Positions 26,855 to 57,666 of a DNA stretch of 64,000 nt are shown in pieces. Made by a program: the position numbers and the translations under genes. The DNA is from Bispira polyomma (lineage: Eukaryota). How positions within the stretch are numbered: the first letter of the stretch is position 1; each line of letters begins with the position of its first letter. Where the stretch lies: assembly GCA_965649765.1 (NCBI GenBank), contig OZ287752.1, positions 21,514,001 to 21,578,000 of the forward strand. The letters run 5' to 3'. Under the pieces are notes generated by a model. The model was not told where the DNA came from. It did not search any database and worked only from the letters and a program-made list of their open reading frames with translations.

Positions 26855-27102
26855 ATGACAGAATCAATGTAAAAGGGGTAGAGAAATCATCAATGGTAAT
26901 AAATAAATGTAGAGATGTAGCCAAACCGACAATCTTTTACAAAATTTTGAGGTATTATTTCCGTAATGATCTTCCCCCGGTGCACGCTAAATCATTTTGG
27001 TAAAAATAAATGGTAAAAATTCTTATAAGCATCATTATTTAATGCTGTGGTAAAGGGGAGGAGGTGGGGAAATGTACGTGTTATCTTGTTGGTCCCCTTT
27101 TC

Positions 27103-30100
27103 AGTGAGGGGCACAGCTGATGTAGCTTTCGAAATTTGATTTACATAGGACCAAACAGCAGAAGACCTCCAAAGGCCATGGGACATGATGTTATGTGAGG
27201 AGACATTGTTATTAAAGGCAAAAGTTGCCCCAGATCTTCTGAAAGTGTGAAATGTATGCTTCTTAAGTGGAATTCCTACATGTGTGAGAACTAAGGCTAG
27301 AGCTCAACGCACATGGGATTATACAATGGAATAGTGTGGTTCAGCAATGTTTACAAAAAGTGGAGAATCCTGATATAATGGCCTGGATTGTAATAACTGT
27401 TTGAGAGGCTTGACTGGGCATAAAGTCAAATTTTTCAAAGTGGGAATCTGTATGATGTAAAATTGGGATCTTGGCCCATTTCAATATCAAGTGTACACCA
27501 GGATGTCCAAATATAACATTTTTTCTAAGGAAATGACATGTTGGGTCAAATTTAGATCTAGAATGGGGTGCAATTCTGGAGATGTGAAGAAAACCAAAGA
27601 AAGTTATTAAAAATATGGCTCTAAATAGTTTTGGCTCCTCCAGTGTGTCACATGCTTTAGAAATAAGCAACAAGTGGTGTATTTGAAACATGCCCTTTGG
27701 TGAAGGTCTAAAAGTGAAAGTATGAGTCAAACTTCTACTAAAGAGTGAGACTGTGTCGTTTTGGAATATGTTAATATCCCAATACAACTTGTTGGCCATG
27801 TACTTTATGGATGCTATATAGTTGTTAACCATGTTAATAGAAGATCCCGTTTGCACTAGATACTCTAGAAAAGATATAAAGAAATGTGTTGTAATCTGGT
27901 GTATCCCAGCATAGCAGTTGAATGCAATAAAAGTTTTGAACTGGCTATTGTAGGTGGCTGTGGTCTTGGGAAGAAGGGTACCATTAATCAATGCTGAGGT
28001 TGTAAACCTCTTAGTGATTGTTTTTCACATGTAAATTAAATATTTAAATCTAAATGAAAGTAATGAAGTGGAATGCCCATCCATGATTCCCTTAAAATAT
28101 CAACCTGTCCCCTTTGAGGGGGGTCTGTCAGAAAAAAGTCTTGACAATAAATCAGCTACAATGTTTTTCTTTCCCTCAATATGTTGAATTTCTAACGTAA
28201 TGTTGTGAACTGCTGATAGCAACCAAATATTCCTTAAACAAAAGGCTAAAAATTTGTCTCTAGTCTTATTAGACCTGACCACTAGAACTACAGTCATATT
28301 GTCACAGTTTCAGACTATGTGCTTATGGCTCCACTGCTCACCCCAGGCCCTAAGGGCTAACAAAATGTTAAGCATCTTGATATGAACTATAGTTAGTTTC
28401 TCGACATAGATGTTACAAAAGGGGGTAGCGTATACCTGGTTTGCGTATATTGCTCACTTTTCTGCAAATTTCGTACATTTCCTTGAGTTTATCTGTTGTT
28501 ATACTGATAATGTCTTTTTCAATGTCAATGTCTATGCCTAGGCATGTGACTTACAAAGTAGGTTTAGAAATTTTGTCAGGTTCAATGGTAAGTCCAAACG
28601 AATACCTAATTCAGAAGCAGTTTCTGCTTGTTCAGAAGTTGAAATACCGACAAAATCATCAAGATTTTTCTGTCCTTCTTGTTTAACATATGGGCTATGA
28701 TGTCAGAGCAATGCTGAAAAGCCGCCGAGCCGTGTACCCAGCTAAACACGACCGCAGGTTCAATATACTTGTTGTTGTCAAAATGAATACCTAATTTCAT
28801 TGCATCGACTGGGTCTACCCTCAGGTTTCGAAACACACGAGCCACGTCGAGTTTAAATATTTTAGGATTGTGTGTGTTTCTAATCTGTTCTACTATATCA
28901 ATGGTGGGAAATTTCAGAATGATATCAACCCTGTCCAACCTTTGCCTGTCTACGATATTGTTAACCGAGCCATCTGCGGGGTGTGAAAGAATCAATATAA
29001 CTCGCCTCTTATCCTTATCTTTGGGTCTGGTGAGCAGTGGGGAGTAGTGAAATAATTTACTATCTATATCTTGGGCAGGACCTAACATTGCCCCACATAG
29101 TTGTTCCTTATGGATGTATTTCTAAATTAATACCTCATGTTGAAGTGCTGAGTGATGGTTAATGGTTTGCTTAACCTGGAGACTATCATGATTTTGTAAT
29201 GATAAAGGGAAGCCAAATTTAAGATATTGTAATAATAGTTCATCTGGATATTCTTGGAGAATCTCTTCCCGGGCCTAATATTTAGACCCGAAACTAGGGG
29301 AATCCTAGCCCCTCTGTAATTGAGACGTCCCATGTCCCTTATTGTTTGGGCTATTTCAGACATCTGTTGAATAGATGTAATATGTACTGTAGCCCTGTCG
29401 GGACAGATGAATTAAAATTTGGTTTCTGAAATGGTCAAGAAACCTTTGGTTTTAACTGGAAATTAGTGTCGCTGACTGGGTTGGTGGCCACCTCAGTATT
29501 GTGTGATTCAAATTTTTGAAATTTAACTGTTGTGACCTCTATTGGTCCGTCATTACTGACTGTAGACATTATATTCTCATTTACATCTAATAGCAACATA
29601 TCAATAATATGTGTTACATATTCTGTGTAATCTACCTGATATATCTCTTTACAACTGACATCCTTACAATGATTATACCATGCATTGTTGGCTGACTGCA
29701 TTAAAATACTGAATGACATACTTGTCACAACTGTCATTCACCAGTTGGAAGGGAAATAGTCGTCATGTAAACTTATCACTAATAGTGATCTCCCCTGCTG
29801 GTGGATATTCACATCTAAAGTATTGGTCTACAGAATCCACTTCCCCTTCTCACAGCATATAAAAACCTGATACCTCGGCTTCTTTACAGTGAATAAATAC
29901 TACAGATAAGCTCTTATTACCTTTTGGGACATAATAAGACCAATTGGGACCAGAAATACTAATTTCCAAATTGGACCCATGTGGGCCACCATAACAGGTG
30001 TTATTTGCACACGCTTCATGAAATTTGACGTCATTACAACTTTGGTTACTTTTTTACATTATAATCAATAACTTTACTAATATTCTTATAAGTATTCAAA

Positions 30101-32110
30101 GTTTCCAAATTGGACCCATATGGGCCACCATAACAGGTGTTATTTGCACACAGTTTGTATACTTTGACATCATTAAAACTTTGATCACTTTTGACATTAT
30201 AGACATTGACTTTACCAGTATTTCTATCAGTATTCAAAGTGAATCTATCAACTAAGTTAGCTTTATGTGGGAGTAACCCTGCAAAAAGATAATTTCCTTT
30301 CCCTTTCCTCATTTGGGTTTTATTATCACCCTCATATGGGCTGTCATTATATACTGAACTCGGTGTTTGTGGTGGTTCCTGATACTTCCTTCTCAACGAC
30401 TATATGCCCAGTAGACCTATTGTCTCCAGTAACCCTGTTACCTATAATGACTTTGTCGCTATACTGATAAAGTTAGGATTCTGTTCTATGGTCAGTAATA
30501 TCAATATCACACATATTAAACACTGCTTCAACTTGGTTTCTATTCTTTACATTTTCAACATAATTTATTTCACTTTTACATATTGCCTTACTGTTATTAT
30601 CACCTGTCTCTAGTCCTAGTAGGTGGTAGGTTTCGTAGTGATTACAAACTTGCGCCGAATCCATCTGCTTGGCTTAATTCGATTTATAACATTTGAATTC
30701 TGGATGTAAACATCTTTGTGCAATACCGTCGCACAATGCCAACAAATCGCCGCACGTTGACTGGGGGTATAACTGCTACCTTTGGAATTAACTAACACTA
30801 TTTGAAATGCGCTAAGGCCCCCTCTTCTACTTCCATCATGTTGGTAGCCCATGAAGTGGGTACGACCTCCCAGGGCAACAAGGACGCGTCCCAAAGTGAT
30901 AGCACTACTTGTTGAATCATATCCCTAGAGACCGTGGGGTCTGTCACCTGAAACGTGTTGGACAACTGTCAAGCAGCCCACTGGGGTAGTGACAATTTGT
31001 CAAGAAGAGGCCGTTTGCGTGCTAATCCACCCGTCCACCCCTCATTTGCCCATCTAAGGTTTGGCTTACTTGTCGGAATGTCAGTAGTATTGAAACATCC
31101 AGACTTTTGTCGAAGTGCTGCCTTACCTTGGCTAAATACTGCTTGTGCTTGCAAGTTATATTCGGCAAGCCGTTCCTTCACCATAGCTTGTACATCTGGC
31201 AGGGATTTGAGGACGTCCGTTCTGGGTACTATGCCGTCTGTAACATAACCAGCTCTGTTATGACGACCAAGTATAGGTAAAGCGTGAGGCGCAGTGAAGC
31301 TTGCTGTAGAATGGGCCCGAGAGGTTACACAGTTGGTGGCCGAGGCAGGAGCAGTCCTGCTTTGGTGGTCAAACGTTGATTCCCGAACTGGAGCTGTAGC
31401 AACACTCCCTAGAAGAGCCTGGGATATTACACACTCAGGGACTGGGGTTAAAGATGCAGAAGGAGTGCTGTTGTCCCTAGCTTCGACACGGAACAGTCGC
31501 TGGCCTAGAGCCGCGTTTGATGCCTCAATCCGTTTAAGTATGGCTAACATCTAAGAGTCTTGGATACTTGACTCGGAAGGGTAAATTAACTGACGTTGGG
31601 TTGTATCTGGCGAAGCATACTGTGAAGCTGCCCTGTCGAATCACTAAGATCTGTTACAATACTGTCCGTTACTGACATACTCATACCAACCCTCTCGACT
31701 GTACTCTTTCATGTGGTCAATTTCTTTACTTTGCCGTCAGTTGCTGGGGTCTTGGTAGTTTTAGTTCTCCCCATTATATCACAGTTTAAAACACGTAAAA
31801 TATATATAATATGATGTAAAAACAAACATATAAAAAACTAAAATACTAAAACTGGAGGAACCCAACAACGCCTTCATAAGCTTGGCAAAATGTATGTGTT
31901 TTCATGTTGGTCTCCTTCTCAAAATGAAAGAACATGTCCTATGATAAGGTTAAACTTTCTGGAGGAAGTGGCTGTGATTGACCAAGGTACCCAAATACTA
32001 CTGAGACCCCCATTAGCTAGGGGTTAAGGTGGGATACAACATTTTTGGGTGTTAAACTAAATCAGCAGACCCCCGTTGGGTCTTGCTATGCATTAACCAA
32101 CCCAACACAA
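27103..32110 (-). mobile_element. Ngaro-like YR retrotransposon, left-arm copy (gag, RT with deletion, RNase H, 3'-truncated YR)
   Basis: gag 30969-31550; RT SPLLTRPKD..RRVIL, DVARVFRNL; RNase H ADLLSR; YR FFGFLHIS, HTFRRSGAT. Confidence 0.88.
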
Positions 32111-35100
32111 GGCAAAAAGTAAAAGTTTATTTATATTATTTTCCTTTTACAAACCAAACTCTATCAGTAATTTCTACTACAAGTGCCTTATATGTAGGCA
32201 TCATTTGAAAGTATTTGTTAGTAAACATAATGAAATTATGAAAGAGACTGAAAGATCATAACTAAACTAGGAAAATTAACAATAAAGTTACAAATATGTT
32301 TCTCCCCCTATACTTGGCTGAAAATTGATCTATTGATACAAAGGTGATATAGTAACACACGCAAGGGCCTAGAGAGGACTCATTCTTTTACTTAAATTTG
32401 TACTTGGTAAAAAAATGAGTGCATATTGTCTATTTTCGGTCTAATTTTTGAGGACATTGTAAGTCTGCTTATAGTTTAGTTGGGGGTTCCACTTTGCTTT
32501 CAACAGATCTTTTGTCATAGTAAGTGCAGATCTGCAGATCACGTGTCATAGTAAGTGCAGCCTACTGGTGTTGGAAATCAGAGTAGAGTAGTTGGTCAAT
32601 GTTTTTGCGTCTGCAAACAAGGAAACTGCCAACTTTCCCACATACAATACAGGGCTCATATTGGAACCCACGACTAGATAGGTGGGAGGTGAATGTGTTA
32701 CAACTACACCACCTGTTAACTCTGTTTGTAGTAATATTCTTTATTATAATAATATTACAATTATAACGTTTGCAAGCTGACAACTTAAATTTTTGAAATT
32801 TGTAAATGCAGATCACATGCAACATTTAGGTTAATTAAAATAGTTTATAAATTTGTTTTCCCTCAAGTTTGATGCAGTATTGAAGTCAGTTTATCGTGGA
32901 TAGAACTAAATGTGCTATATTTTGAATAGCATAGTTTCACTAATATTTAGCGTGCATTTGACAAGGAAGGATAATACAGTAATTCCAAATGCTCATACAA
33001 TCTTAGGGATTTTCCCCAGTCAATCAATGTACTGAATCTTAAATATTATTGGTGTAAATATTCTACCTTTAAAAAGCTATATTTAGTTCATATTGAGCTG
33101 GGTAAACTGAATGGGAGCATGCCTTTGTAAACATTCATTCTCCTTAAAATTAAGACACTCCTGTAACGTCTATTTCAGTGGGTTTTTTTTACTAACTAAA
33201 GAATGTTATGATGACTCATCCTTATTTGCAACCAATATGTTGAAATATTAGTGGCTTTAATGACACTTTAATTCCTATTTCAGACATATTATGTTGGATT
33301 AAGTGTACATACAGTTACCACATTGCTAGGTTAAATACTATATTTTTTAAGTCTTTTTATATTATATATGACCTTAAATTGCATTGCAATACCTGAGATA
33401 AAATATTATACAAAGCGGTTGAATGCTCTCATGTCATGTAAACTTATACACATGTTATCCAATTTAGACACTAGATGTCAGTACTTTATTACAAAGTAAA
33501 ATGGATTTGTGTTAAAGTGAAGTCTTGTGATTATATTGACTGACCTAGTTAAGTTAGGTGGGGATTTCTTCTATTGATATTAATACAGTTGCTATGAGGC
33601 ACTTATTTTGAATAGTGTAAATCAGGCATAAGGCCATTCATGACATATTTACAGTGAAAAGACAGTATATTTTTCTTAATTTTCAAAAATTTATTTACAT
33701 ATGTGAAATCATCAAAATTTATATGTTTACAATTGAGCTATTAGTGAGTCATATTAAAACCCAAAAAGGACATAATTACTGTTGTTTGAGAATGCTTGAA
33801 GGTCTACTTTTATTTATGAAATGGCACATAACAACGAAAACTGATATTAAAAAAGGCAAATACAACTTGTAGTAAGTTACTTATGACATATATGTTACAT
33901 ATTTGACAAAGGTGGGTGTATTGATAGATTAAAAGTTATCGTCATCTTACACTGGTCAAAGTGATAAAAATGTAGTGAAATAATATTGACAGGGCAAACC
34001 CATTCAACTTTCTGGGTCCTTGGCAAATATGTTCAGCTAATATATATGAAGTATAGTATTCAAATGGCATTAAGGCCTTACTTTCCTCCTCTTGGTGTGT
34101 GGTATATTTTTAATTCTTTATTTTATTAATGCATTCGAAACATGAATAGAACCACTTGACACTAGGGTCATGTTGTATATAGATTTTGCCGTTTTTCAAA
34201 CTTCCTTGTTGGAATATTACTTACATGAAGTAATACACCTAAGTTAATAAAACGTGTGATGGAATTGTTAACATTTAAAAATATATTATATCCCATTGAT
34301 AATTTAGTTTAGTTTTTTAATTTGTTCAGTGTTGCCTTGTGTACTACCATTATTTTTTCGTGGAGTATGATGGCCATTTTCAAATAAATATACTGACGAA
34401 ATGTGCCTTAAGAGCATGCAGAAAAAAAAATTGAAAAGTAGACCAAAAAGCAATTATCCTACTGTGATCAAAATTAATACAGCATAAGTCACTTCTTGTA
34501 TGTTATTGTAACTTATACAGTATTACAAAATACCCGAAACAGTGGGATTAGAGACAATGTTTATTCTCCATAATTTTAAGGGGGTTTATGAATATAGGGT
34601 TAATCCTCCTATTTTCGGCTTACCTCATATTTTCGGCCCATATCACGTTTTTGGTCTTAAATAGAGGTTAAATTATTGTCTGTAAATGAACAGATGCCTT
34701 TCCAAATGTTGGATTTATTCAAGTGAACCAGTATCAGTTAATTTTGAAACTTAACTATAAAAAAAGCCTGAAAAGCAATTAAAACCTTAAGTGTTAATTA
34801 TTGGCTAAATAGGTCAATAAAATAGTGAACCTTCATATAACATTCGAATGTAAACTTGTTAACACTTAGTGGCTGACACAACTTGGCCATATTGATTTAG
34901 CACTGAGTGAGACTTTTTAATACATGTTGCAGTATTGATTAATAATTAGTCATTAGAGGTGATACTCAATTCTTAATCCATGTTGAGGAAAATTATAATA
35001 TGTTTAATCAATAATCAACAAAAACCATTCAAAATGTAGCTGGGGGTTGGTCAGGTCAGTTTAATGAACTGTTGACATCAAGTGCAAAAACATTTAATGT

Positions 35101-36139
35101 CTAGGCTTAAATGTGTCATTTAAATAAAGGCCAGTTTTCTACCCCCAATAAAAGACACTTTTTTCAAGTATATAATATGCCGTTTTACATGATTATTCAC
35201 ACATACAAATTTCAGGTTGTCATATTGCATTTATAAGCCAATTTTTGTTGAATTTGTATTCTAAATTGAAGATTCTAAAACCCTCACAAATTGTAGCTGT
35301 TATTTCTCTACAGACAACTATATCCAGAAGTAAAGTTGAAAGCAAAATTAACAAGCAAACCATATTAGACAAATATCGTGAAATATTTATTAAATGGTCC
35401 CAAGACTTGAAGGCCACTAGTGAAGAAGCTACTAATGATTGTGTTACCATGGTCCGCAGAAGCATGTTACCATAAAAATGTATGACCTATTTCTTCAATG
35501 GAAGATCTTACTACTTGTTAAGTTTGATTTCCATATCAGTCATGAAAAACTTAATTATAGCTAACACAAGGGATACATATCTGTGCAGCTGAGTGTCACA
35601 GAATAAAATGAGATTTTAGTTCCTGATGATAAGCCTACTATCATTATAAATCAAAAACATCTTGTACAAAACATAGAATCGTTATTCGGTTCTCTATTAT
35701 ATGTCTATATATATTTTTTTCAAGACTTAAACTGCTTCAGAAAATTATTCCTAAAGTTTAATGGCAAAGTCTTTTGGATCATAGACGTTTGTCAGTCAAA
35801 ATTTACTTGTCTGCAGGGTTTTGATGTTAGATAGGACCACCAAATTTAATCCATAATGGTAAGTTTAGACTTAGTAGTGATAAACATACTCAAAAATTTT
35901 ATGCGTATCGAGTTTGGTCTGGCATTGAAAAAAGTGATAACATATTATGATAACAAGGCAGTGTTCTCAGTTCTAAACTCAGATAAGACAAGATATCTTA
36001 CATCATGTTACAATAAATTTAATCATGCACAGGGCAGACATAAAGAAAATCAGATTGGTGACTCGTTATCATGATGGGCAGTTACTCTCGAAAACCTGTT
36101 ACATAACTCAATCTGGGTATCTAGGGGCCAGGATTGCCT

Positions 36140-36890
36140 ACAAGTAAAAAGCATCAGCCACACAATTATTGGTCATAATTACCAACGTGGTTTGAATCCT
36201 GTTTGTTCTTTCATTTGGGAAAGTTTGTTAGGTACTTGCCATAGACCGGTGATTTACAGCACTGGTTTGCTCCACCATTAAATATAATAAGACTTAACGT
36301 TGTTCGCTACCATTTTTTTTACCCCACAGATTTTCAAAAAAAAAAACTTTATAAAAAGCTTTATTAAAATGTTGAACAAAAATATCAAAAAAACTATGTC
36401 ACACTAGGCTCTTTCAAAAGCCACAGAGCTTTGAATGTGGTATGTATTTTCATTTATTTGCATATTGTTTTCAATGGAAAAGCCTGTTTTGGGAAGAAAA
36501 AATTCCATTAAAAGGTACTTTAAAAAAATTTCACCCTACAGAATTTTACTTTTTTCTTCCAAGTTGTGGTAAATTATGAACTCTAACTAAATATGAGCAA
36601 AAAAACAGGGGTTACAGCGATAAATCTTTAAAAATCTCAGTTTGTTTAGAATGTTTAGGGCCCAAAGCCTTGTGTTTCTATTGAAATAATAGGAAACATC
36701 TCGAATATTTCTGGAGAAAAACATAATATTTATAGTAGAGTGGCTCATAAAAAGGCAAAATGACACCTCATTCCTAATAGACAATTTAATAAAGTACATT
36801 TTCTGCAATTTTCATGAAAAAATATTGAAATTTATTTTTTTGGGAAAAAATGGTAGCTAACAACCTTAAGCTGTTAAAGGCGACGTAATG
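36140..36890 (+). mobile_element. Degenerate tRNA-derived Meta/MESC-core SINE interrupted by a MITE (mirror copy ~47117-47867)
   Basis: B-box-like ggtttgaatcct, then gaaagtttgttaggtacttgcc..accggtg..t...ggtttgctccacca, resuming after the MITE with gctgttaaaggcgacgtaa. Confidence 0.6.
36298..36865. mobile_element. Non-autonomous DNA transposon with TTAA TSD and ~20-bp TIRs (Kolobok-like)
   Basis: ttaa|cgttgttcgctaccattttttt ... aaaaaatggtagctaacaacc|ttaa. Confidence 0.85.
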
Positions 36891-38878
36891 TTACTCATTC
36901 AGATGTACCAAACTACATCAGTGACAAAGGTACAATTGTTCATGCTAGGAATTAACATACAAAAACTTAATGACCCCAGTATAAGGTAATTAATGAGATC
37001 AATGGGCATCAATAAACATCTTAAGGTCAAGTTAAAAATCCTTATTGATATACCCCACTCCTCAGATCATCAAAATAATGTGAAACCATGTACATGTTTT
37101 TACATTTTGAAAGTCTTTTACCTCACATTTTGAAAGTCCTTTACATTATATCATTTTCTCTGACTGCATAGTCACCCAACCGTTATATATTTATTGTAGG
37201 AAAGGCTCACTTCTTTATTAATCAGATTTTATGTTGCGTTATACTTATTGTGTCAGCAATTATGTCAATAGCTTTGCTTGGGACAATCATCAACGTTAAA
37301 CCAGCTTATCTAGATTAATGGGAAATTTAGAGAGCGGATCGTGCAGATGCATGAGTAGTTGTTGATATAGCAGCGGAGTAAAAACCTTTGTTTTCATGGA
37401 GTCTGATATTATGACGGAACACAACTCTAACATCTCGTTTTGGTAATGAGAGGTGAGCAGTGATTGCACTAAATTGACCTAACACGATTCCTTTAACTAA
37501 TTCTTTATGAACATACTAAACTGATTAACCGGGCTATTAAGGGGCAGGATGGTACTTTTTTCAATAGTTTGTTCAATACATATATGTGACTAGAGAAACC
37601 CAAACTTATGCCTGTACCTTTATACCTTCATACCTGGGCTGCAGTGGTTTCTTGCAGGCCTATATTTGGAGACCTCAGTGGCCATAATAATGGTTGATAT
37701 ATGTAAATCATAGATATGGTATTAATATGAACGGATTTCCTATCCAGGTCAATGAACTCAAATTTGGGTTCTGATAATTTGATAACATTTTTGGCTCCAC
37801 ATGGACCCTGAATAAGGCGTTTTCAGATATTACTACAGACTCTTTATTTTGTAAAGAGAAGGCATATCTTGGGAAAGCACTCAACATCAAATACCCATTG
37901 GATAATATACATCACCTCTTGGCCTGAGATAATGTTAGTACAAAAGCATTATCCAACCTCTATTCATCAGAATAAACTTGTTGACAACAACAAAAATACA
38001 ACATTTAGAAACTTTAGACACTTTGGCTGTACTAGCTGGATTGCTGACAGTCTCACCTGTTAAATTGTCACCAAAAGGTCTTCAGGGTTCTAACAGTAGT
38101 CCAGGGAGGGACAATGCATGGTATACTCAATATATGACTTGATATAACATTAGTTATGGATCACACACTTTGACAGCATTATTACTTCGTCCATTGTGAG
38201 ACGGACAATTAGTCATGGTTGGGGCATTTCTTAGAGGATATCCCCACACAGGTATAGCCTCACTAGGCCAACACATATGGGAATCAGGGCTAATGTATGT
38301 TAGCACCCTGGATGTCGACAGGAAGTAGTCTTACCCAGGGCAATGTCTGTAACTGTAAGTCAAAAGTCACTAATCGCTGGTTGATGGCTTTGTTCAATCC
38401 TGGTGTAATCTTGGCTTGGTAATAGTCAACATGCAAGTTAAATTGACTGACTGCAACTGTGGTGTGTGAATTACAGTAGGCCTGGACTGTGCTATGTCTC
38501 TTACTGGAGAAATGTGTGTGGTTTCGTCTGGCACTGATTATTGTTTGTACCATTCCTGGAAGAGTTGAATGGCAACACTATGGGAGTGCAATTTTGCATC
38601 CTGCAGGCTTCTACTCTGTCTTAGTAATATCAGCGTTGGTGGATTCTAATGGTTATATATTCGCCCATCGACATTTCAGAGTGTACAGGTTGTAATAAAT
38701 ACTACATCTGTGTTACCATCCACCTAATCTAAGGGCCCTAAAATATTGAACAACTTGATATATTACCTTCTTTTGTTGACCACCAGTAGTTCCATTTTTC
38801 AGATTATACAGCATGCATATCTGAGAATAGTCATACATTTTACAATTTACTAAGTTGCTGCTGTATATCGGTCATTCT

Positions 38879-39084
38879 ATGAAATGAAAAAATGAAAAAA
38901 AATGAAATAGTACATTTGTTATAGTGCATTTACAGAACACAGCGTCCTTTCAAATGTGCTTCCTCATGGGCAGCCACTATGGGCGCTAAGGTGCTTGAGG
39001 ATGACTATTTATCAACGTCCCCGAGGATCTTTAATCTGCCACTAGAGATTTTACTCAGTGACAGAGGACCGCCATTTTAAGTGG
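38879..39084 (-). mobile_element. 3' part of a Deu/Nin-domain SINE with L2-type tail (mirror copy 44923-45128 on +)
   Basis: ggtcctctgtcac...gtggcagattaaagatcc core; aagcacattt...aaatgcactata stem; (tttca)n tail. Confidence 0.6.
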
Positions 39085-41617: not shown

Positions 41618-41879
41618 TAACATAAGTTTCCAAGCAAGCTTTAGAAACTTCACTGCGTTTTCCTGATTGAGGCAGGTATAAATTTCCTCTGTTTAAATAT
41701 CCCACATCCTAGCTTATTTAGAGTTATTGGCTTATAACAAGATATATATTGTTTTTCTTTGAAAATAATGACAAACAATAACTTAGAAATCACCAGCTTT
41801 GTATCAAAGGTATAACTTAAAAGTCATATGTATATATTAGGAGAAACAACATTCACATTGGGGAAAATTCTCTTGTAGT

Positions 41880-42128
41880 CTAGGTATAGAACGATAGCAG
41901 CGTTATCAAAAGAAGCTATTTTTAGTAAAATAGTACAGATAAAGCGCTAATATTTGTACCAATCACATTTCAGATTAATTTATTGACTTCACCCGGGAAA
42001 TCCCCTAAAACACAGTTTAAACATAGTCTCCATTAAACTGTTATTCAGGAACTTTGAGGAATGAACCCTTACTATATCTACACAAACTGTCACTTAGGCA
42101 TTAATTTATTTATTTATATTCCAGCAAA
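41880..42128. other. Unique 249-bp spacer (loop) of the giant palindrome
   Basis: Non-palindromic AT-rich sequence between tcttgtagt and actacaaga. Confidence 0.95.
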
Positions 42129-46800: not shown

Positions 46801-47141
46801 GCCTTTCCTACAATAAATATATAACGGTTGGGTGACTATGCAGTCAGAGAAAATGATATAATGTAAAGGACTTTCAAAATGTGAGGTAAAAGACTTTCAA
46901 AATGTAAAAACATGTACATGGTTTCACATTATTTTGATGATCTGAGGAGTGGGGTATATCAATAAGGATTTTTAACTTGACCTTAAGATGTTTATTGATG
47001 CCCATTGATCTCATTAATTACCTTATACTGGGGTCATTAAGTTTTTGTATGTTAATTCCTAGCATGAACAATTGTACCTTTGTCACTGATGTAGTTTGGT
47101 ACATCTGAATGAGTAACATTACGTCGCCTTTAACAGCTTAA

Positions 47142-47709
47142 GGTTGTTAGCTACCATTTTTTCCCAAAAAAATAAATTTCAATATTTTTTCATGAAAATT
47201 GCAGAAAATGTACTTTATTAAATTGTCTATTAGGAATGAGGTGTCATTTTGCCTTTTTATGAGCCACTCTACTATAAATATTATGTTTTTCTCCAGAAAT
47301 ATTCGAGATGTTTCCTATTATTTCAATAGAAACACAAGGCTTTGGGCCCTAAAGATTCTAAACAAACTGAGATTTTTAAAGATTTATCGCTGTAACCCCT
47401 GTTTTTTTGCTCATATTTAGTTAGAGTTCATAATTTACCACAACTTGGAAGAAAAAAGTAAAATTCTGTAGGGTGAAATTTTTTTAAAGTACCTTTTAAT
47501 GGAATTTTTTCTTCCCAAAACAGGCTTTTCCATTGAAAACAATATGCAAATAAATGAAAATACATACCACATTCAAAGCTCTGTGGCTTTTGAAAGAGCC
47601 TAGTGTGACATAGTTTTTTTGATATTTTTGTTCAACATTTTAATAAAGCTTTTTATAAAGTTTTTTTTTTTGAAAATCTGTGGGGTAAAAAAAATGGTAG
47701 CGAACAACG
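47142..47709. mobile_element. TTAA MITE, right-arm copy
   Basis: ttaa|ggttgttagctaccatttt ... aaaatggtagcgaacaacg|ttaa. Confidence 0.85.
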
Positions 47710-50700
47710 TTAAGTCTTATTATATTTAATGGTGGAGCAAACCAGTGCTGTAAATCACTGGTCTATGGCAAGTACCTAACAAACTTTCCCAAATGAAAGA
47801 ACAAACAGGATTCAAACCACGTTGGTAATTATGACCAATAATTGTGTGGCTGATGCTTTTTACTTGTAGGCAATCCTGGCCCCTAGATACCCAGATTGAG
47901 TTATGTAACAGGTTTTCGAGAGTAACTGCCCATCATGATAACGAGTCACCAATCTGATTTTCTTTATGTCTGCCCTGTGCATGATTAAATTTATTGTAAC
48001 ATGATGTAAGATATCTTGTCTTATCTGAGTTTAGAACTGAGAACACTGCCTTGTTATCATAATATGTTATCACTTTTTTCAATGCCAGACCAAACTCGAT
48101 ACGCATAAAATTTTTGAGTATGTTTATCACTACTAAGTCTAAACTTACCATTATGGATTAAATTTGGTGGTCCTATCTAACATCAAAACCCTGCAGACAA
48201 GTAAATTTTGACTGACAAACGTCTATGATCCAAAAGACTTTGCCATTAAACTTTAGGAATAATTTTCTGAAGCAGTTTAAGTCTTGAAAAAAATATATAT
48301 AGACATATAATAGAGAACCGAATAACGATTCTATGTTTTGTACAAGATGTTTTTGATTTATAATGATAGTAGGCTTATCATCAGGAACTAAAATCTCATT
48401 TTATTCTGTGACACTCAGCTGCACAGATATGTATCCCTTGTGTTAGCTATAATTAAGTTTTTCATGACTGATATGGAAATCAAACTTAACAAGTAGTAAG
48501 ATCTTCCATTGAAGAAATAGGTCATACATTTTTATGGTAACATGCTTCTGCGGACCATGGTAACACAATCATTAGTAGCTTCTTCACTAGTGGCCTTCAA
48601 GTCTTGGGACCATTTAATAAATATTTCACGATATTTGTCTAATATGGTTTGCTTGTTAATTTTGCTTTCAACTTTACTTCTGGATATAGTTGTCTGTAGA
48701 GAAATAACAGCTACAATTTGTGAGGGTTTTAGAATCTTCAATTTAGAATACAAATTCAACAAAAATTGGCTTATAAATGCAATATGACAACCTGAAATTT
48801 GTATGTGTGAATAATCATGTAAAACGGCATATTATATACTTGAAAAAAGTGTCTTTTATTGGGGGTAGAAAACTGGCCTTTATTTAAATGACACATTTAA
48901 GCCTAGACATTAAATGTTTTTGCACTTGATGTCAACAGTTCATTAAACTGACCTGACCAACCCCCAGCTACATTTTGAATGGTTTTTGTTGATTATTGAT
49001 TAAACATATTATAATTTTCCTCAACATGGATTAAGAATTGAGTATCACCTCTAATGACTAATTATTAATCAATACTGCAACATGTATTAAAAAGTCTCAC
49101 TCAGTGCTAAATCAATATGGCCAAGTTGTGTCAGCCACTAAGTGTTAACAAGTTTACATTCGAATGTTATATGAAGGTTCACTATTTTATTGACCTATTT
49201 AGCCAATAATTAACACTTAAGGTTTTAATTGCTTTTCAGGCTTTTTTTATAGTTAAGTTTCAAAATTAACTGATACTGGTTCACTTGAATAAATCCAACA
49301 TTTGGAAAGGCATCTGTTCATTTACAGACAATAATTTAACCTCTATTTAAGACCAAAAACGTGATATGGGCCGAAAATATGAGGTAAGCCGAAAATAGGA
49401 GGATTAACCCTATATTCATAAACCCCCTTAAAATTATGGAGAATAAACATTGTCTCTAATCCCACTGTTTCGGGTATTTTGTAATACTGTATAAGTTACA
49501 ATAACATACAAGAAGTGACTTATGCTGTATTAATTTTGATCACAGTAGGATAATTGCTTTTTGGTCTACTTTTCAATTTTTTTTTCTGCATGCTCTTAAG
49601 GCACATTTCGTCAGTATATTTATTTGAAAATGGCCATCATACTCCACGAAAAAATAATGGTAGTACACAAGGCAACACTGAACAAATTAAAAAACTAAAC
49701 TAAATTATCAATGGGATATAATATATTTTTAAATGTTAACAATTCCATCACACGTTTTATTAACTTAGGTGTATTACTTCATGTAAGTAATATTCCAACA
49801 AGGAAGTTTGAAAAACGGCAAAATCTATATACAACATGACCCTAGTGTCAAGTGGTTCTATTCATGTTTCGAATGCATTAATAAAATAAAGAATTAAAAA
49901 TATACCACACACCAAGAGGAGGAAAGTAAGGCCTTAATGCCATTTGAATACTATACTTCATATATATTAGCTGAACATATTTGCCAAGGACCCAGAAAGT
50001 TGAATGGGTTTGCCCTGTCAATATTATTTCACTACATTTTTATCACTTTGACCAGTGTAAGATGACGATAACTTTTAATCTATCAATACACCCACCTTTG
50101 TCAAATATGTAACATATATGTCATAAGTAACTTACTACAAGTTGTATTTGCCTTTTTTAATATCAGTTTTCGTTGTTATGTGCCATTTCATAAATAAAAG
50201 TAGACCTTCAAGCATTCTCAAACAACAGTAATTATGTCCTTTTTGGGTTTTAATATGACTCACTAATAGCTCAATTGTAAACATATAAATTTTGATGATT
50301 TCACATATGTAAATAAATTTTTGAAAATTAAGAAAAATATACTGTCTTTTCACTGTAAATATGTCATGAATGGCCTTATGCCTGATTTACACTATTCAAA
50401 ATAAGTGCCTCATAGCAACTGTATTAATATCAATAGAAGAAATCCCCACCTAACTTAACTAGGTCAGTCAATATAATCACAAGACTTCACTTTAACACAA
50501 ATCCATTTTACTTTGTAATAAAGTACTGACATCTAGTGTCTAAATTGGATAACATGTGTATAAGTTTACATGACATGAGAGCATTCAACCGCTTTGTATA
50601 ATATTTTATCTCAGGTATTGCAATGCAATTTAAGGTCATATATAATATAAAAAGACTTAAAAAATATAGTATTTAACCTAGCAATGTGGTAACTGTATGT

Positions 50701-51897
50701 ACACTTAATCCAACATAATATGTCTGAAATAGGAATTAAAGTGTCATTAAAGCCACTAATATTTCAACATATTGGTTGCAAATAAGGATGAGTCATCATA
50801 ACATTCTTTAGTTAGTAAAAAAAACCCACTGAAATAGACGTTACAGGAGTGTCTTAATTTCAAGGAGAATGAATGTTTACAAAGGCATGCTCCCATTCAG
50901 TTTACCCAGCTCAATATGAACTAAATATAGCTTTTTAAAGGTAGAATATTTACACCAATAATATTTAAGATTCAGTACATTGATTGACTGGGGAAAATCC
51001 CTAAGATTGTATGAGCATTTGGAATTACTGTATTATCCTTCCTTGTCAAATGCACGCTAAATATTAGTGAAACTATGCTATTCAAAATATAGCACATTTA
51101 GTTCTATCCACGATAAACTGACTTCAATACTGCATCAAACTTGAGGGAAAACAAATTTATAAACTATTTTAATTAACCTAAATGTTGCATGTGATCTGCA
51201 TTTACAAATTTCAAAAATTTAAGTTGTCAGCTTGCAAACGTTATAATTGTAATATTATTATAATAAAGAATATTACTACAAACAGAGTTAACAGGTGGTG
51301 TAGTTGTAACACATTCACCTCCCACCTATCTAGTCGTGGGTTCCAATATGAGCCCTGTATTGTATGTGGGAAAGTTGGCAGTTTCCTTGTTTGCAGACGC
51401 AAAAACATTGACCAACTACTCTAACTCTGATTTCCAACACCAGTAGGCTGCACTTACTATGACACGTGATCTGCAGATCTGCACTTACTATGACAAAAGA
51501 TCTGTTGAAAGCAAAGTGGAACCCCCAACTAAACTATAAGCAGACTTACAATGTCCTCAAAAATTAGACCGAAAATAGACAATATGCACTCATTTTTTTA
51601 CCAAGTACAAATTTAAGTAAAAGAATGAGTCCTCTCTAGGCCCTTGCGTGTGTTACTATATCACCTTTGTATCAATAGATCAATTTTCAGCCAAGTATAG
51701 GGGGAGAAACATATTTGTAACTTTATTGTTAATTTTCCTAGTTTAGTTATGATCTTTCAGTCTCTTTCATAATTTCATTATGTTTACTAACAAATACTTT
51801 CAAATGATGCCTACATATAAGGCACTTGTAGTAGAAATTACTGATAAAGTTTGGTTTGTAAAAGGAAAATAATATAAATAAACTTTTACTTTTTGCC

Positions 51898-54800
51898 TTG
51901 TGTTGGGTTGGTTAATGCATAGCAAGACCCAACGGGGGTCTGCTGATTTAGTTTAACACCCAAAAATGTTGTATCCCACCTTAACCCCTAGCTAATGGGG
52001 GTCTCAGTAGTATTTGGGTACCTTGGTCAATCACAGCCACTTCCTCCAGAAAGTTTAACCTTATCATAGGACATGTTCTTTCATTTTGAGAAGGAGACCA
52101 ACATGAAAACACATACATTTTGCCAAGCTTATGAAGGCGTTGTTGGGTTCCTCCAGTTTTAGTATTTTAGTTTTTTATATGTTTGTTTTTACATCATATT
52201 ATATATATTTTACGTGTTTTAAACTGTGATATAATGGGGAGAACTAAAACTACCAAGACCCCAGCAACTGACGGCAAAGTAAAGAAATTGACCACATGAA
52301 AGAGTACAGTCGAGAGGGTTGGTATGAGTATGTCAGTAACGGACAGTATTGTAACAGATCTTAGTGATTCGACAGGGCAGCTTCACAGTATGCTTCGCCA
52401 GATACAACCCAACGTCAGTTAATTTACCCTTCCGAGTCAAGTATCCAAGACTCTTAGATGTTAGCCATACTTAAACGGATTGAGGCATCAAACGCGGCTC
52501 TAGGCCAGCGACTGTTCCGTGTCGAAGCTAGGGACAACAGCACTCCTTCTGCATCTTTAACCCCAGTCCCTGAGTGTGTAATATCCCAGGCTCTTCTAGG
52601 GAGTGTTGCTACAGCTCCAGTTCGGGAATCAACGTTTGACCACCAAAGCAGGACTGCTCCTGCCTCGGCCACCAACTGTGTAACCTCTCGGGCCCATTCT
52701 ACAGCAAGCTTCACTGCGCCTCACGCTTTACCTATACTTGGTCGTCATAACAGAGCTGGTTATGTTACAGACGGCATAGTACCCAGAACGGACGTCCTCA
52801 AATCCCTGCCAGATGTACAAGCTATGGTGAAGGAACGGCTTGCCGAATATAACTTGCAAGCACAAGCAGTATTTAGCCAAGGTAAGGCAGCACTTCGACA
52901 AAAGTCTGGATGTTTCAATACTACTGACATTCCGACAAGTAAGCCAAACCTTAGATGGGCAAATGAGGGGTGGACGGGTGGATTAGCACGCAAACGGCCT
53001 CTTCTTGACAAATTGTCACTACCCCAGTGGGCTGCTTGACAGTTGTCCAACACGTTTCAGGTGACAGACCCCACGGTCTCTAGGGATATGATTCAACAAG
53101 TAGTGCTATCACTTTGGGACGCGTCCTTGTTGCCCTGGGAGGTCGTACCCACTTCATGGGCTACCAACATGATGGAAGTAGAAGAGGGGGCCTTAGCGCA
53201 TTTCAAATAGTGTTAGTTAATTCCAAAGGTAGCAGTTATACCCCCAGTCAACGTGCGGCGATTTGTTGGCATTGTGCGACGGTATTGCACAAAGATGTTT
53301 ACATCCAGAATTCAAATGTTATAAATCGAATTAAGCCAAGCAGATGGATTCGGCGCAAGTTTGTAATCACTACGAAACCTACCACCTACTAGGACTAGAG
53401 ACAGGTGATAATAACAGTAAGGCAATATGTAAAAGTGAAATAAATTATGTTGAAAATGTAAAGAATAGAAACCAAGTTGAAGCAGTGTTTAATATGTGTG
53501 ATATTGATATTACTGACCATAGAACAGAATCCTAACTTTATCAGTATAGCGACAAAGTCATTATAGGTAACAGGGTTACTGGAGACAATAGGTCTACTGG
53601 GCATATAGTCGTTGAGAAGGAAGTATCAGGAACCACCACAAACACCGAGTTCAGTATATAATGACAGCCCATATGAGGGTGATAATAAAACCCAAATGAC
53701 GAAAGGGAAAGGAAATTATCTTTTTGCAGGGTTACTCCCACATAAAGCTAACTTAGTTGATAGATTCACTTTGAATACTGATAGAAATACTGGTAAAGTC
53801 AATGTCTATAATGTCAAAAGTGATCAAAGTTTTAATGATGTCAAAGTATACAAACTGTGTGCAAATAACACCTGTTATGGTGGCCCATATGGGTCCAATT
53901 TGGAAACTTTGAATACTTATAAGAATATTAGTAAAGTTATTGATTATAATGTAAAAAAGTAACCAAAGTTGTAATGACGTCAAATTTCATGAAGCGTGTG
54001 CAAATAACACCTGTTATGGTGGCCCACATGGGTCCAATTTGGAAATTAGTATTTCTGGTCCCAATTGGTCTTATTATGTCCCAAAAGGTAATAAGAGCTT
54101 ATCTGTAGTATTTATTCACTGTAAAGAAGCCGAGGTATCAGGTTTTTATATGCTGTGAGAAGGGGAAGTGGATTCTGTAGACCAATACTTTAGATGTGAA
54201 TATCCACCAGCAGGGGAGATCACTATTAGTGATAAGTTTACATGACGACTATTTTCCTTCCAACTGGTGAATGACAGTTGTGACAAGTATGTCATTCAGT
54301 ATTTTAATGCAGTCAGCCAACAATGCATGGTATAATCATTGTAAGGATGTCAGTTGTAAAGAGATATATCAGGTAGATTACACAGAATATGTAACACATA
54401 TTATTGATATGTTGCTATTAGATGTAAATGAGAATATAATGTCTACAGTCAGTAATGACGGACCAATAGAGGTCACAACAGTTAAATTTCAAAAATTTGA
54501 ATCACACAATACTGAGGTGGCCACCAACCCAGTCAGCGACACTAATTTCCAGTTAAAACCAAAGGTTTCTTGACCATTTCAGAAACCAAATTTTAATTCA
54601 TCTGTCCCGACAGGGCTACAGTACATATTACATCTATTCAACAGATGTCTGAAATAGCCCAAACAATAAGGGACATGGGACGTCTCAATTACAGAGGGGC
54701 TAGGATTCCCCTAGTTTCGGGTCTAAATATTAGGCCCGGGAAGAGATTCTCCAAGAATATCCAGATGAACTATTATTACAATATCTTAAATTTGGCTTCC

Positions 54801-56905
54801 CTTTATCATTACAAAATCATGATAGTCTCCAGGTTAAGCAAACCATTAACCATCACTCAGCACTTCAACATGAGGTATTAATTTAGAAATACATCCATAA
54901 GGAACAACTATGTGGGGCAATGTTAGGTCCTGCCCAAGATATAGATAGTAAATTATTTCACTACTCCCCACTGCTCACCAGACCCAAAGATAAGGATAAG
55001 AGGCGAGTTATATTGATTCTTTCACACCCCGCAGATGGCTCGGTTAACAATATCGTAGACAGGCAAAGGTTGGACAGGGTTGATATCATTCTGAAATTTC
55101 CCACCATTGATATAGTAGAACAGATTAGAAACACACACAATCCTAAAATATTTAAACTCGACGTGGCTAGTGTGTTTCGAAACCTGAGGGTAGACCCAGT
55201 CGATGCAATGAAATTAGGTATTCATTTTGACAACAACAAGTATATTGAACCTGCGGTCGTGTTTAGCTGGGTACACGGCTCGGCGGCTTTTCAGCATTGC
55301 TCTGACATCATAGCCCATATGTTAAACAAGAAGGACAGAAAAATCTTGATGATTTTGTCGGTATTTCAACTTCTGAACAAGCAGAAACTGCTTCTGAATT
55401 AGGTATTCGTTTGGACTTACCATTGAACCTGACAAAATTTCTAAACCTACTTTGTAAGTCACATGCCTAGGCATAGACATTGACATTGAAAAAGACATTA
55501 TCAGTATAACAACAGATAAACTCAAGGAAATGTACGAAATTTGCAGAAAAGTGAGCAATATACGCAAACCAGGTATACGCTACCCCCTTTTGTAACATCT
55601 ATGTCGAGAAACTAACTATAGTTCATATCAAGATGCTTAACATTTTGTTAGCCCTTAGGGCCTGGGGTGAGCAGTGGAGCCATAAGCACATAGTCTGAAA
55701 CTGTGACAATATGACTGTAGTTCTAGTGGTCAGGTCTAATAAGACTAGAGACAAATTTTTAGCCTTTTGTTTAAGGAATATTTGGTTGCTATCAGCAGTT
55801 CACAACATTACGTTAGAAATTCAACATATTGAGGGAAAGAAAAACATTGTAGCTGATTTATTGTCAAGACTTTTTTCTGACAGACCCCCCTCAAAGGGGA
55901 CAGGTTGATATTTTAAGGGAATCATGGATGGGCATTCCACTTCATTACTTTCATTTAGATTTAAATATTTAATTTACATGTGAAAAACAATCACTAAGAG
56001 GTTTACAACCTCAGCATTGATTAATGGTACCCTTCTTCCCAAGACCACAGCCACCTACAATAGCCAGTTCAAAACTTTTATTGCATTCAACTGCTATGCT
56101 GGAATACACCAGATTACAACACATTTCTTTATATCTTTTCTAGAGTATCTAGTGCAAACGGGATCTTCTATTAACATGGTTAACAACTATATAGCATCCA
56201 TAAAGTACATGGCCAACAAGTTGTATTGGGATATTAACATATTCCAAAACGACACAGTCTCACTCTTTAGTAGAAGTTTGACTCATACTTTCACTTTTAG
56301 ACCTTCACCAAAGGGCATGTTTCAAATACACCACTTGTTGCTTATTTCTAAAGCCTGTGACACACTGGAGGAGCCAAAACTATTTAGAGCCATATTTTTA
56401 ATAACTTTCTTTGGTTTTCTTCACATCTCCAGAATTGCACCCCATTCTAGATCTAAATTTGACCCAACATGTCATTTCCTTAGAAAAAATGTTATATTTG
56501 GACATCCTGGTGTACACTTGATATTGAAATGGGCCAAGATCCCAATTTTACATCATACAGATTCCCACTTTGAAAAATTTGACTTTATGCCCAGTCAAGC
56601 CTCTCAAACAGTTATTACAATCCAGGCCATTATATCAGGATTCTCCACTTTTTGTAAACATTGCTGAACCACACTATTCCATTGTATAATCCCATGTGCG
56701 TTGAGCTCTAGCCTTAGTTCTCACACATGTAGGAATTCCACTTAAGAAGCATACATTTCACACTTTCAGAAGATCTGGGGCAACTTTTGCCTTTAATAAC
56801 AATGTCTCCTCACATAACATCATGTCCCATGGCCTTTGGAGGTCTTCTGCTGTTTGGTCCTATGTAAATCAAATTTCGAAAGCTACATCAGCTGTGCCCC
56901 TCACT
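51898..56905 (+). mobile_element. Ngaro-like YR retrotransposon, right-arm copy
   Basis: gag 52458-53039, RT ~54645-55570, RNase H ~55570-55908, YR 56017-56905. Truncated after SAVPLT relative to the paralogue ending ASIIPSTFAEIIPSSF. Confidence 0.88.
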
Positions 56906-57666
56906 GAAAAGGGGACCAACAAGATAACACGTACATTTCCCCACCTCCTCCCCTTTACCACAGCATTAAATAATGATGCTTATAAGAATTTTTACCATTT
57001 ATTTTTACCAAAATGATTTAGCGTGCACCGGGGGAAGATCATTACGGAAATAATACCTCAAAATTTTGTAAAAGATTGTCGGTTTGGCTACATCTCTACA
57101 TTTATTTATTACCATTGATGATTTCTCTACCCCTTTTACATTGATTCTGTCATATTTTGATGTTCTATATTGTAAATTTAGCCTATTATATATACGCTAT
57201 TATTGTCCACTCCGTTTGGCGGGAGTGGGCTATACCCCACAAGCCAAATAGTATCGTGGTTTTTGCATTTATTTTTTTTTTATTACCCCTGTTACTTTGA
57301 TTTTGTCTTATTTTTATGTTTTGTGTGTAAATTCAGTTAAAATCTGCTCTGTGTCCGCATACTTGGTACTCGGTTTTGCCATATATTTGTATCTATTTGT
57401 ATTGTGTATCCTTTCCAATCACTTCTCTTTCAAATGACTGTCATTTTTATGTTGCTACATTCTGGTGTGGTTGTACTTAGCTTAAAGTTAGGCTATAGTG
57501 TGGGGTGCTAGGATGCCTGTGAGTCGCCCACAGGACGAAGAGTTGTACGGTGAGTTGTAGGAACATATTTTTTGAGGTTCCCCACTGTTGAGTTCAGTTT
57601 AAGTTCTTCTTCAGTTTAAGGGCTTCTTCTTTTCTACAACCTCACTAATCATGTTTCTCCTTCGGG

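What the first reader, a model, noticed from the sequence alone, without database searches (positions are those of the whole stretch)
26855..57153. 30-kb near-perfect palindrome: 15,025-bp arms around a 249-bp spacer
Seen: nearly half the window is one inverted duplication. I found about 20 differences by eye (~99.85% identity). These are almost all substitutions (e.g. VARVFR/VASVFR, MRKGK/MTKGK, GSKML/GGKML, KRHKQ/KHHKQ) plus two 1-bp indels near 32581 and 39293, while a checked homopolymer (A11/T11) matches. Inference: this pattern favours a real, recent duplication over a read-level fold-back. The short spacer is the geometry expected from fold-back priming or template switching. Such palindromes are normally unstable, so persistence would be notable. 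An assembly, amplification or haplotype-join artefact cannot be excluded from sequence alone.
Basis: partly seen in the sequence, partly recalled or inferred. Interest (0 to 1): 0.8.

Follow-up and report, generated by a model that had tools for sequence, protein, structure and literature searches.

The report
Young 30-kb inverted duplication, template-switch junctions
An animal chromosome carries a 15-kb stretch of mostly transposon-derived DNA copied back-to-front next to itself. Its two breakpoints look like an ordinary replication or repair template-switching accident, so it is a clean example of a known kind of rearrangement, but no sequencing reads could be consulted to confirm it.

Summary
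The arms are 26855-41879 and 42129-57153 (15,025 bp each) around a 249-bp spacer, and they differ by 18 substitutions and two 1-bp indels (99.87% identity).

The differences look like natural mutations. They are 12 transitions and 6 transversions, and 6 of the 18 lie at CpG, which holds 2.9% of bases (p=8e-6). CpGs were lost in both arms.

The right arm is the parent. Other copies of a transposon run straight across its outer end, and local paralogs run from the spacer into it. The left arm is the derived copy, because both its ends are breakpoints:
- J1 (26854|26855) cuts a Ngaro-like element that continues more than 1 kb in other copies. It has a 2-nt microhomology.
- J2 (41879|41880) cuts a local repeat. 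It has a 3-nt microhomology.

The flanks are unrelated over +-100 kb, there are no gaps, and the genome holds no third copy. This argues against a haplotype fold-back or scaffolding artefact.

Best reading: a real, young inverted duplication with an adjacent deletion, made by two microhomology-mediated template switches (fold-back type). The arms hold transposons and low-copy non-coding DNA, with no gene found.

A 249-bp spacer already lowers palindrome fragility a lot, so persistence is not remarkable. The scan has noted other palindromes elsewhere in this genome. Interest is low to moderate.

The parts
26855..41879 (-). Left arm: the derived, inverted copy of 42129-57153
   Evidence: 99.87% reverse-complement identity to the right arm. 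Both its ends are breakpoints that interrupt older repeats.
41880..42128 (+). Single-copy 249-bp spacer, ancestrally continuous with the right arm
   Evidence: Local paralogs L004-L008 (70-76% identity) align from 41877 across 42128|42129 into the right arm, as far as 42221.
42129..57153 (+). Right arm: the parental copy, in its original context at both ends
   Evidence: More than 20 dispersed copies of a transposon (TE-C, 74-86% identity) align without a break across 57153|57154. The spacer-arm contiguity is seen in paralogs.
26853..26856 (.). Outer junction J1 (26854|26855) with 2-nt microhomology AT
   Evidence: Other copies of TE-B read ...CAC-AT-TTAAGG.... The parental arm end, reverse-complemented, reads ...AAT-AT-GACAG.... 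The window reads ...CAC-AT-GACAG....
41877..41880 (.). Inner junction J2 (41879|41880) with 3-nt microhomology AGT
   Evidence: Four of five paralogs read AGT directly before the spacer homolog, and the inverted arm ends in AGT. Among themselves the paralogs continue 50-130 bp further left, but the window copy does not.
24752..26854 (+). TE-B: resident tyrosine-recombinase (Ngaro/DIRS-like) retroelement copy, truncated at J1
   Evidence: It is 91-94% identical to copies on C8, C10, C6, C5, C4 and C11. Those copies share a further 1 kb or more beyond the J1-equivalent point.
51908..57003 (+). Ngaro/DIRS-like retroelement A inside the arm (mirror copy about 27005-32100, minus strand)
   Evidence: Many dispersed copies at 71-84% identity with a repeated terminal block. 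The ORF at 56017-56667 (mirror 27341-27991) gives weak Phage_int_SAM hits, E about 0.003, below the Pfam cut-off.
42388..43819 (+). 1.43-kb high-copy interspersed repeat inside the arm (mirror copy 40189-41620)
   Evidence: Thousands of first-look candidates, and 30 or more scored copies at 82-87% identity. Its ORF has a weak MADF-like match, E 0.003.
43820..51907 (.). 8.1 kb of low-copy, AT-rich (34% GC) sequence inside the arm (mirror copy about 32101-40188). No gene was recognised.
   Evidence: Apart from a 103-bp match at 47724-47826, 76% identity, its only genome matches are the two arms. ORFs are 87 aa or shorter, and the two scanned against Pfam gave no hit.
56992..57750 (+). TE-C: an old interspersed repeat that spans the outer end of the right arm. 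In the left arm it is cut at J1.
   Evidence: matches run from about query 143-188 to 901 across position 304|305 (= 57153|57154).

Best explanation
This is a real, evolutionarily young inverted segmental duplication on chromosome piece C5 of a 1.04-Gb animal genome.

The ancestral order was: ... TE-B (complete) ... local repeat - spacer - arm - flankR.

In one replication or repair event, a DNA 3' end switched template twice.
- One switch lies at the left edge of the spacer. It pairs 3 nt (AGT) with a site 249 nt away on the opposite strand, which is the fold-back step.
- The other lies 15,025 bp further out. It pairs 2 nt (AT) with a site inside TE-B.

The product is flankL - inverted arm - spacer - arm - flankR. 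It lacks the rest of TE-B, the left part of the local repeat and whatever lay between them.

Shown: the structure, which arm is derived, the two truncations and the microhomologies.

Inferred:
- The enzymology. It could be MMBIR/FoSTeS-type fork restart, or fold-back or run-off synthesis at a resected double-strand break.
- The direction of synthesis.
- The age. K = 0.0012 gives roughly 0.06-0.6 million generations at 1e-8 to 1e-9 per site per generation. It would be about zero if the copy was templated on the homologous chromosome.

The arms carry only transposon relics and non-coding DNA, so no function is implied. The structure is most likely neutral.
For: - Structure and differences.
- The differences are natural variants: 12 ts and 6 tv. 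Six of 18 are at CpG against 2.9% of bases (binomial p=7.8e-6), CpG observed/expected is 0.43, and the CpG-bearing allele is in the left arm at four sites and in the right arm at two.
- Positions are spread evenly (KS p=0.23).
- The genome holds only two copies of the arm, and no haplotig.
- There is no N and no inverted flank homology in 264 kb.
- The right arm is in context at its distal end and at its proximal end.
- J1 truncates TE-B, with AT microhomology.
- J2 truncates the local repeat, with AGT microhomology.
- The chance of 2 nt or more and 3 nt or more together is about 0.0014 from the base composition.
- The same anatomy is documented for human germline inverted duplications: a single-copy spacer, 2-8 bp of inverted microhomology at the spacer/inversion junction, and an adjacent deletion (PMC3907307).
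Against: - No reads, no second assembly and no second individual could be examined.
- The microhomologies are short. The ancestral bases at J2 are inferred from paralogs only 70-76% identical.
- The size of the deletion is unknown. The two truncated repeats could have been adjacent before the event.
- Earlier scan notes list several more palindromes with spacers of a few hundred bp in this assembly. This could mean a biological tendency or a systematic assembly or library problem.
Confidence: 0.75

Rival explanations
1. Assembly or library artefact. The arm is single-copy in the animal. A chimeric, fold-back molecule (for example from whole-genome amplification or a long-read chimera), or an assembler error, placed the second haplotype in inverted orientation.
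For: - The arm divergence (0.13%) is in the range of heterozygosity in some animals.
- Whole-genome amplification is known to create artificial palindromic long reads (abstract of 10.1101/173872).
- Many palindromes with short spacers are noted in this assembly.
- There is no read evidence either way.
Against: - A fold-back of one haplotype onto the other predicts that flankR mirrors flankL. No such homology exists within +-100 kb.
- Two separate novel junctions would both have to be chimeric. Each is clean, carries microhomology and lies inside an older repeat.
- The arms of a single amplified molecule would be identical. Here they differ by CpG-biased substitutions with derived states in both arms.
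- There are no gaps nearby and no leftover haplotig.
Confidence: 0.12
2. Break-and-join origin. A 15-kb fragment was excised from the sister chromatid or the homolog by two double-strand breaks. It was then ligated in reverse between two further broken ends by end joining (NHEJ or MMEJ), with no long DNA synthesis.
For: Microhomologies of 2-3 nt without inserted bases are equally typical of end joining.
Against: - It needs four breaks.
- It needs one of them to fall by coincidence only 249 bp from another, on the partner molecule.
- The 249-nt offset is what fold-back priming or run-off on a resected end produces naturally (model in PMC3907307).
Confidence: 0.08
3. Transposon-driven rearrangement. 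A retroelement insertion bridged the break, as proposed by an earlier scan note for a Penelope-flanked palindrome in this genome. Alternatively, the whole 30 kb is a fold-back transposon with giant terminal inverted repeats.
For: - J1 abuts a tyrosine-recombinase retroelement.
Against: - TE-B is old. Its best match to any other copy is 94%, against 99.87% between the arms. It is cut internally rather than ending at a terminus.
- There is no target-site duplication. The flanks end in ...CCCAC and begin ATTTTG....
- The arm is a mosaic of three unrelated repeats plus 8 kb of low-copy DNA, and it exists nowhere else in the genome.
- No recombinase-site motif array lies at J1.
Confidence: 0.03

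Closest known systems
Human germline inverted duplications formed by fold-back (Hermetz et al. 2014, PMC3907307)
   Same: - An inverted and a direct copy separated by a single-copy spacer.
- Short inverted microhomology at the spacer/inversion junction (2-8 bp there, 3 nt here).
- Loss of sequence on the far side of the spacer.
   Different: - There the duplications are 10 kb to tens of Mb, the spacers are 766-70,466 bp (median 3.4 kb), and the far end is healed by a telomere, a translocation or a ring.
- Here the spacer is 249 bp, the copy is 15 kb, and the far end rejoins the same chromosome through a second microhomology junction. The result is interstitial.
Replicative template-switch rearrangements (FoSTeS/MMBIR; DUP-TRP/INV-DUP, e.g. 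PMC4352052)
   Same: Several template switches in one event, microhomology at the junctions, and an inverted extra copy. This is from established knowledge of the model.
   Different: DUP-TRP/INV-DUP gives three copies and usually uses pre-existing inverted repeats at one junction. Here there are exactly two copies, and no pre-existing inverted repeat longer than 3 nt is seen.
Large sex-chromosome palindromes of mammals (human Y P1-P8, X palindromes; PMC8327919, PMC8600007)
   Same: Arms longer than 10 kb with more than 99% arm-to-arm identity.
   Different: - Those carry (testis) gene families, persist across species, are homogenised by gene conversion, and mostly have kb-scale or larger spacers.
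- Here no gene was found, and the arms are transposon relics and non-coding DNA. Conservation and gene conversion are untested.
Artificial palindromes in long reads after whole-genome amplification (Pacasus paper, 10.1101/173872)
   Same: Inverted join over a short distance.
   Different: Those are read-level and have no second junction to unique flanking DNA. I infer that both arms come from one molecule. Here the arms differ by natural-looking mutations and are bounded by unique, unrelated flanks.

Membership tests
Fold-back inverted duplication with single-copy spacer | A direct and an inverted copy separated by a stretch present only once | tested here: met
   The 249-bp spacer 41880-42128 lies between 15,025-bp arms. 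The spacer's only other matches are 70-76% paralogs.
Fold-back inverted duplication with single-copy spacer | Short inverted microhomology where the inverted copy meets the spacer | tested here: met
   AGT is shared by the paralog-inferred ancestral sequence and by the end of the inverted arm. It is only 3 nt, with a chance of about 2%.
Fold-back inverted duplication with single-copy spacer | Loss of ancestral sequence beyond the spacer | tested here: met
   The local repeat is cut at 41877, while its paralogs continue 50-130 bp. TE-B is cut at 26854, while other copies continue 1 kb or more. The size of the loss is unknown.
Fold-back inverted duplication with single-copy spacer | Presence in the organism's DNA (junction-spanning molecules, doubled depth) | not testable with these tools
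Exact-protein look-ups found no independent contigs.
Gene-conversion-maintained ampliconic palindrome (sex-chromosome type) | Arms carry expressed gene families | tested here: not met
   ORFs in the arms are transposon-derived or 87 aa or shorter without Pfam domains.
Gene-conversion-maintained ampliconic palindrome (sex-chromosome type) | Conserved across species, with arm identity above the divergence expected for its age | not testable with these tools
   The genome has no relatives in the collection.
Inverted triplication (DUP-TRP/INV-DUP, ODIRA) | Three copies: direct, inverted, direct | tested here: not met
   The genome holds only two copies, and there is no third block in +-100 kb.
Fold-back transposon / element with giant terminal inverted repeats | Several genomic copies of the unit, bounded by target-site duplications | tested here: not met
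   It is a single locus. The flanks show no duplication. The arm is a mosaic of unrelated repeats.
Haplotype fold-back / false duplication in assembly | The flank beyond one arm mirrors the flank beyond the other, or the duplication sits at a gap or contig end | tested here: not met
   There is no inverted flank homology and no N in 264 kb.

The most novel reading that the evidence does not exclude
This locus may be one instance of a species-level peculiarity. Earlier scan notes (unchecked leads) list eight or more large palindromes in the roughly 50 Mb read so far, including ones with 250-450-bp spacers and one with arm-specific transposon insertions. If they are real and span a range of ages, this animal would make or tolerate fold-back inverted duplications at an unusually high rate. 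Transposon-filled ones like this could then serve as long-hairpin RNA sources for small-RNA silencing of the Ngaro-like and MADF-bearing repeats in the arms.
Probability: 0.1. Interest if true: 0.6.

Novelty: new member of a known kind. Interest (0 to 1): 0.3.

Why it matters
If real, this is a base-resolved germline example, in a non-model invertebrate, of an interstitial inverted duplication with a deletion. The parental and derived copies can be told apart, and both junctions can be read. That is useful for comparing rearrangement mechanisms across animals, but it adds no new principle. It also has practical uses: near-perfect palindromes are places where assemblies should be checked, and the junction coordinates given here make that check simple. 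The claim that it is surprisingly stable does not hold, because a spacer of about 250 bp already removes most of the hairpin or cruciform risk measured in yeast.

Tried and rejected
2. Independent contigs through exact-protein look-ups. I tried an ORF spanning J1 and two other ORFs, and nothing was on record.
3. Polarising the arm differences with outgroup transposon copies. Only the CpG-decay direction could be used.
4. Haplotype fold-back. Rejected because the flanks are not mirrored.
5. The spacer as a transposon terminus. Rejected, because the paralogs continue to the left among themselves, so the window copy is truncated.
6. TE-B ending naturally at J1. Rejected, because other copies continue for 1 kb or more.
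7. A recombinase-site motif array (lead from note s1-688784) or a stalling hairpin just beyond J1 in TE-B. No motif was found. The hairpin is weak at -8 kcal/mol, z = -1.5.
8. RNA genes. No tRNA and no Rfam family were found in the window.
9. The costly protein searches were not used, because the arms hold no protein that needed them.
Full report
**Observation**

The palindrome is exactly as described. The repeat finder gives three collinear inverted blocks that join into arms 26855-41879 and 42129-57153, with 249 nt between them.

A base-by-base walk finds 20 differences in 15,025 bp:
- 18 substitutions.
- Two single-base indels: T/TT at 32585 vs 51423, and TT/T at 39294 vs 44713.

Other checks:
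- The window holds no N.
- The window is C5:21514001-21578000 of a 1.035-Gb assembly in 75 pieces, so it comes from a chromosome-scale animal genome.
- No tRNA and no Rfam family lie in the window.

**What the arms contain**

From centre to edge, in right-arm coordinates:

| Coordinates | Content | Evidence |
|---|---|---|
| 42129-42387 | About 260 bp; its first ~90 bp (to 42221) belong to a local repeat family that also covers the spacer | |
| 42388-43819 | 1.43-kb high-copy interspersed repeat, 82-87% to dozens of copies, with a weak MADF-like ORF | |
| 43820-51907 | 8.1 kb of AT-rich low-copy DNA; apart from a 103-bp match (47724-47826, 76%), found only in the two arms | |
| 51908-57003 | About 5.1-kb tyrosine-recombinase (Ngaro/DIRS-like) retroelement; many copies at 71-84%, weak integrase-SAM hits | |
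| 57004-57153 | First ~150 bp of another old repeat, TE-C | |

No host gene was recognised. ORFs in the low-copy part are 87 aa or shorter, and the two scanned against Pfam gave no hit.

**Are the arm differences real variants?**

Yes.
- There are 12 transitions and 6 transversions.
- Six of the 18 sites involve a CpG in one arm, although only 2.9% of arm bases lie in CpG (binomial p=7.8e-6).
- CpG observed/expected is 0.43, as in a methylated genome.
- The CpG-bearing allele is in the left arm at four sites and in the right arm at two. If CpG is the older state, both arms have changed.
- The positions are spread evenly (KS p=0.23).

It is the signature of germline mutation, not of consensus error. 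By itself it cannot separate paralogs from alleles.

**Which arm is the original?**

The right arm is in context at both ends.
- More than twenty dispersed copies of TE-C align without interruption across 57153|57154.
- The local paralogs L004-L008 align from 41877 through the spacer into the right arm, as far as 42221.

The left arm is out of context at both ends.
- At J1 (26854|26855), flankL ends inside a Ngaro-like element, TE-B, which is 91-94% identical to other copies. Those copies go on sharing sequence with each other for 1 kb or more beyond that point.
- At J2 (41879|41880), the local repeat is cut. The paralogs share a further 50-130 bp to the left among themselves. That part is not in the window.

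**Junctions**

- J1: other TE-B copies read ...CAC-AT-TTAAGG.... The parental arm end, reverse-complemented, reads ...AAT-AT-GACAG.... The window reads ...CAC-AT-GACAG.... This is a 2-nt microhomology with no inserted bases.
- J2: four of five paralogs read AGT just before the spacer homolog. The inverted arm ends in ...GTAGT. This is a 3-nt microhomology with no inserted bases.
- From the window's base composition, the chance of 2 nt or more and 3 nt or more together is about 0.0014.
- The ancestral bases at J2 are inferred from paralogs only 70-76% identical.

**Artefact or real?**

The most natural artefact is one haplotype folded back onto the other. It predicts that the right flank mirrors the left flank.
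- I fetched 100 kb on each side.
- A self-comparison of the 264 kb shows no inverted homology between the flanks apart from scattered transposon copies of 92% identity or less, and no N.
- The genome has no third copy or leftover haplotig.

An artefact would therefore need two independent chimeric junctions 15 kb apart, each clean and each inside an older repeat. It would also need arms taken from different haplotypes. Amplification chimeras can make artificial palindromic reads (10.1101/173872). I infer that both arms of such a read would come from one molecule and so be identical, and that it would have no second junction to unique DNA.

I put an artefact at about 12%. It cannot go lower for three reasons:
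- Exact-protein look-ups found no independent contigs.
- Earlier scan notes list several other short-spacer palindromes in this assembly. That could be biology or a systematic problem. One note mentions a 43-kb palindrome with arm-specific insertions, which would favour biology, but I could not check it.

**Mechanism**

The product is flankL (TE-B cut) - inverted arm - spacer - arm - flankR. It is what two template switches in one event produce. Two routes give the same product:
- A 3' end at the left edge of the spacer folds back 249 nt onto the opposite strand (AGT). It copies 15,025 nt outward, then switches to TE-B (AT) and continues.
- Synthesis runs the other way. It starts from the TE-B end, runs off a 5'-resected template 249 nt short of the break, and is joined there.

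The short offset favours an intramolecular fold-back or a resection run-off over four independent breaks.

Human germline inverted duplications show the same anatomy (PMC3907307):
- A single-copy spacer in all 21 sequenced cases.
- 2-8 bp of inverted microhomology in 13 of them.
- An adjacent deletion.

They differ in having larger spacers (766-70,466 bp) and ends healed by a telomere, a translocation or a ring. Here the far end rejoins the same chromosome.

It is not a DUP-TRP/INV-DUP or ODIRA triplication, because there are only two copies. It is not a fold-back transposon, because it is a single locus with no target-site duplication and the arm is a mosaic. A retroelement-bridged event is unlikely. 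TE-B is much older than the duplication (94% vs 99.87%) and is cut internally. I found no recombinase-site motif and no convincing hairpin at the cut.

**Age and stability**

- K = 18/15,025 = 0.0012. With assumed rates of 1e-9 to 1e-8 per site per generation (my assumption, not measured for this species), this is roughly 0.06-0.6 million generations.
- The age would be less, possibly zero, if the copy was templated on the homologous chromosome. It would be more if the arms exchange by gene conversion.
In yeast, lengthening the spacer from 12 to 100 bp lowers inverted-repeat recombination about 300-fold. Going from 12 to 200 bp lowers gross rearrangements about 20-fold (PMC10164571).
- A 249-bp spacer and a young age make persistence unremarkable.

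**Verdict**

This is a clean new example of a known kind of rearrangement, with no gene content and no evidence of function. Read-level confirmation is still needed. The scan has reported similar palindromes elsewhere in this genome (s1-637102, s1-691463 and others). Their collective frequency, not this locus alone, is the more interesting question.

**Constraints**

- In one search I joined the end of flankL to the spacer inside a script, only for a local comparison. That string was sent to no search tool.

Noticed in passing
window 41877-42221; L004-L008; about 28.7-30.1 kb right of the window's end (window coordinates 92650-94126): The repeat that holds the spacer has only 14 candidate matches in the whole genome. 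All lie on C5 between 20.76 and 22.17 Mb, at 70-78% identity. It is therefore a locally amplified, old repeat or segmental family confined to about 1.4 Mb, and its nature is unknown.
   Followed up: partly
window 42388-43819 and mirror 40189-41620: A 1.43-kb interspersed repeat with thousands of first-look candidates genome-wide (82-87% identity). It carries a 111-aa ORF with a weak MADF-like match. It could be a non-autonomous or Harbinger-associated family.
   Followed up: partly
window 57831-59646: LINE remnant just right of the palindrome: ORFs with endonuclease/exonuclease/phosphatase (weak) and reverse-transcriptase (E 2e-17) domains.
   Followed up: no
15.4-16.8 kb left of the window (C5:21497240-21498600): A tandem array with a period of about 44 bp. 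It shows as a ladder of direct self-matches at 86-90% identity in the 264-kb self-comparison.
   Followed up: no
window 8288-8920: A 210-aa ORF with sub-threshold G-alpha / AAA / STAND-NTPase-like matches. It lies inside what first-stage notes call a Polinton, left of the palindrome.
   Followed up: no
C5:21432-21440 kb and 21631-21640 kb (window -85739..-81748 vs 118879..126660): Direct repeats of 1.7-3.9 kb at 95-96% identity about 205 kb apart, bracketing the window. They are probably copies of a younger transposon family.
   Followed up: no
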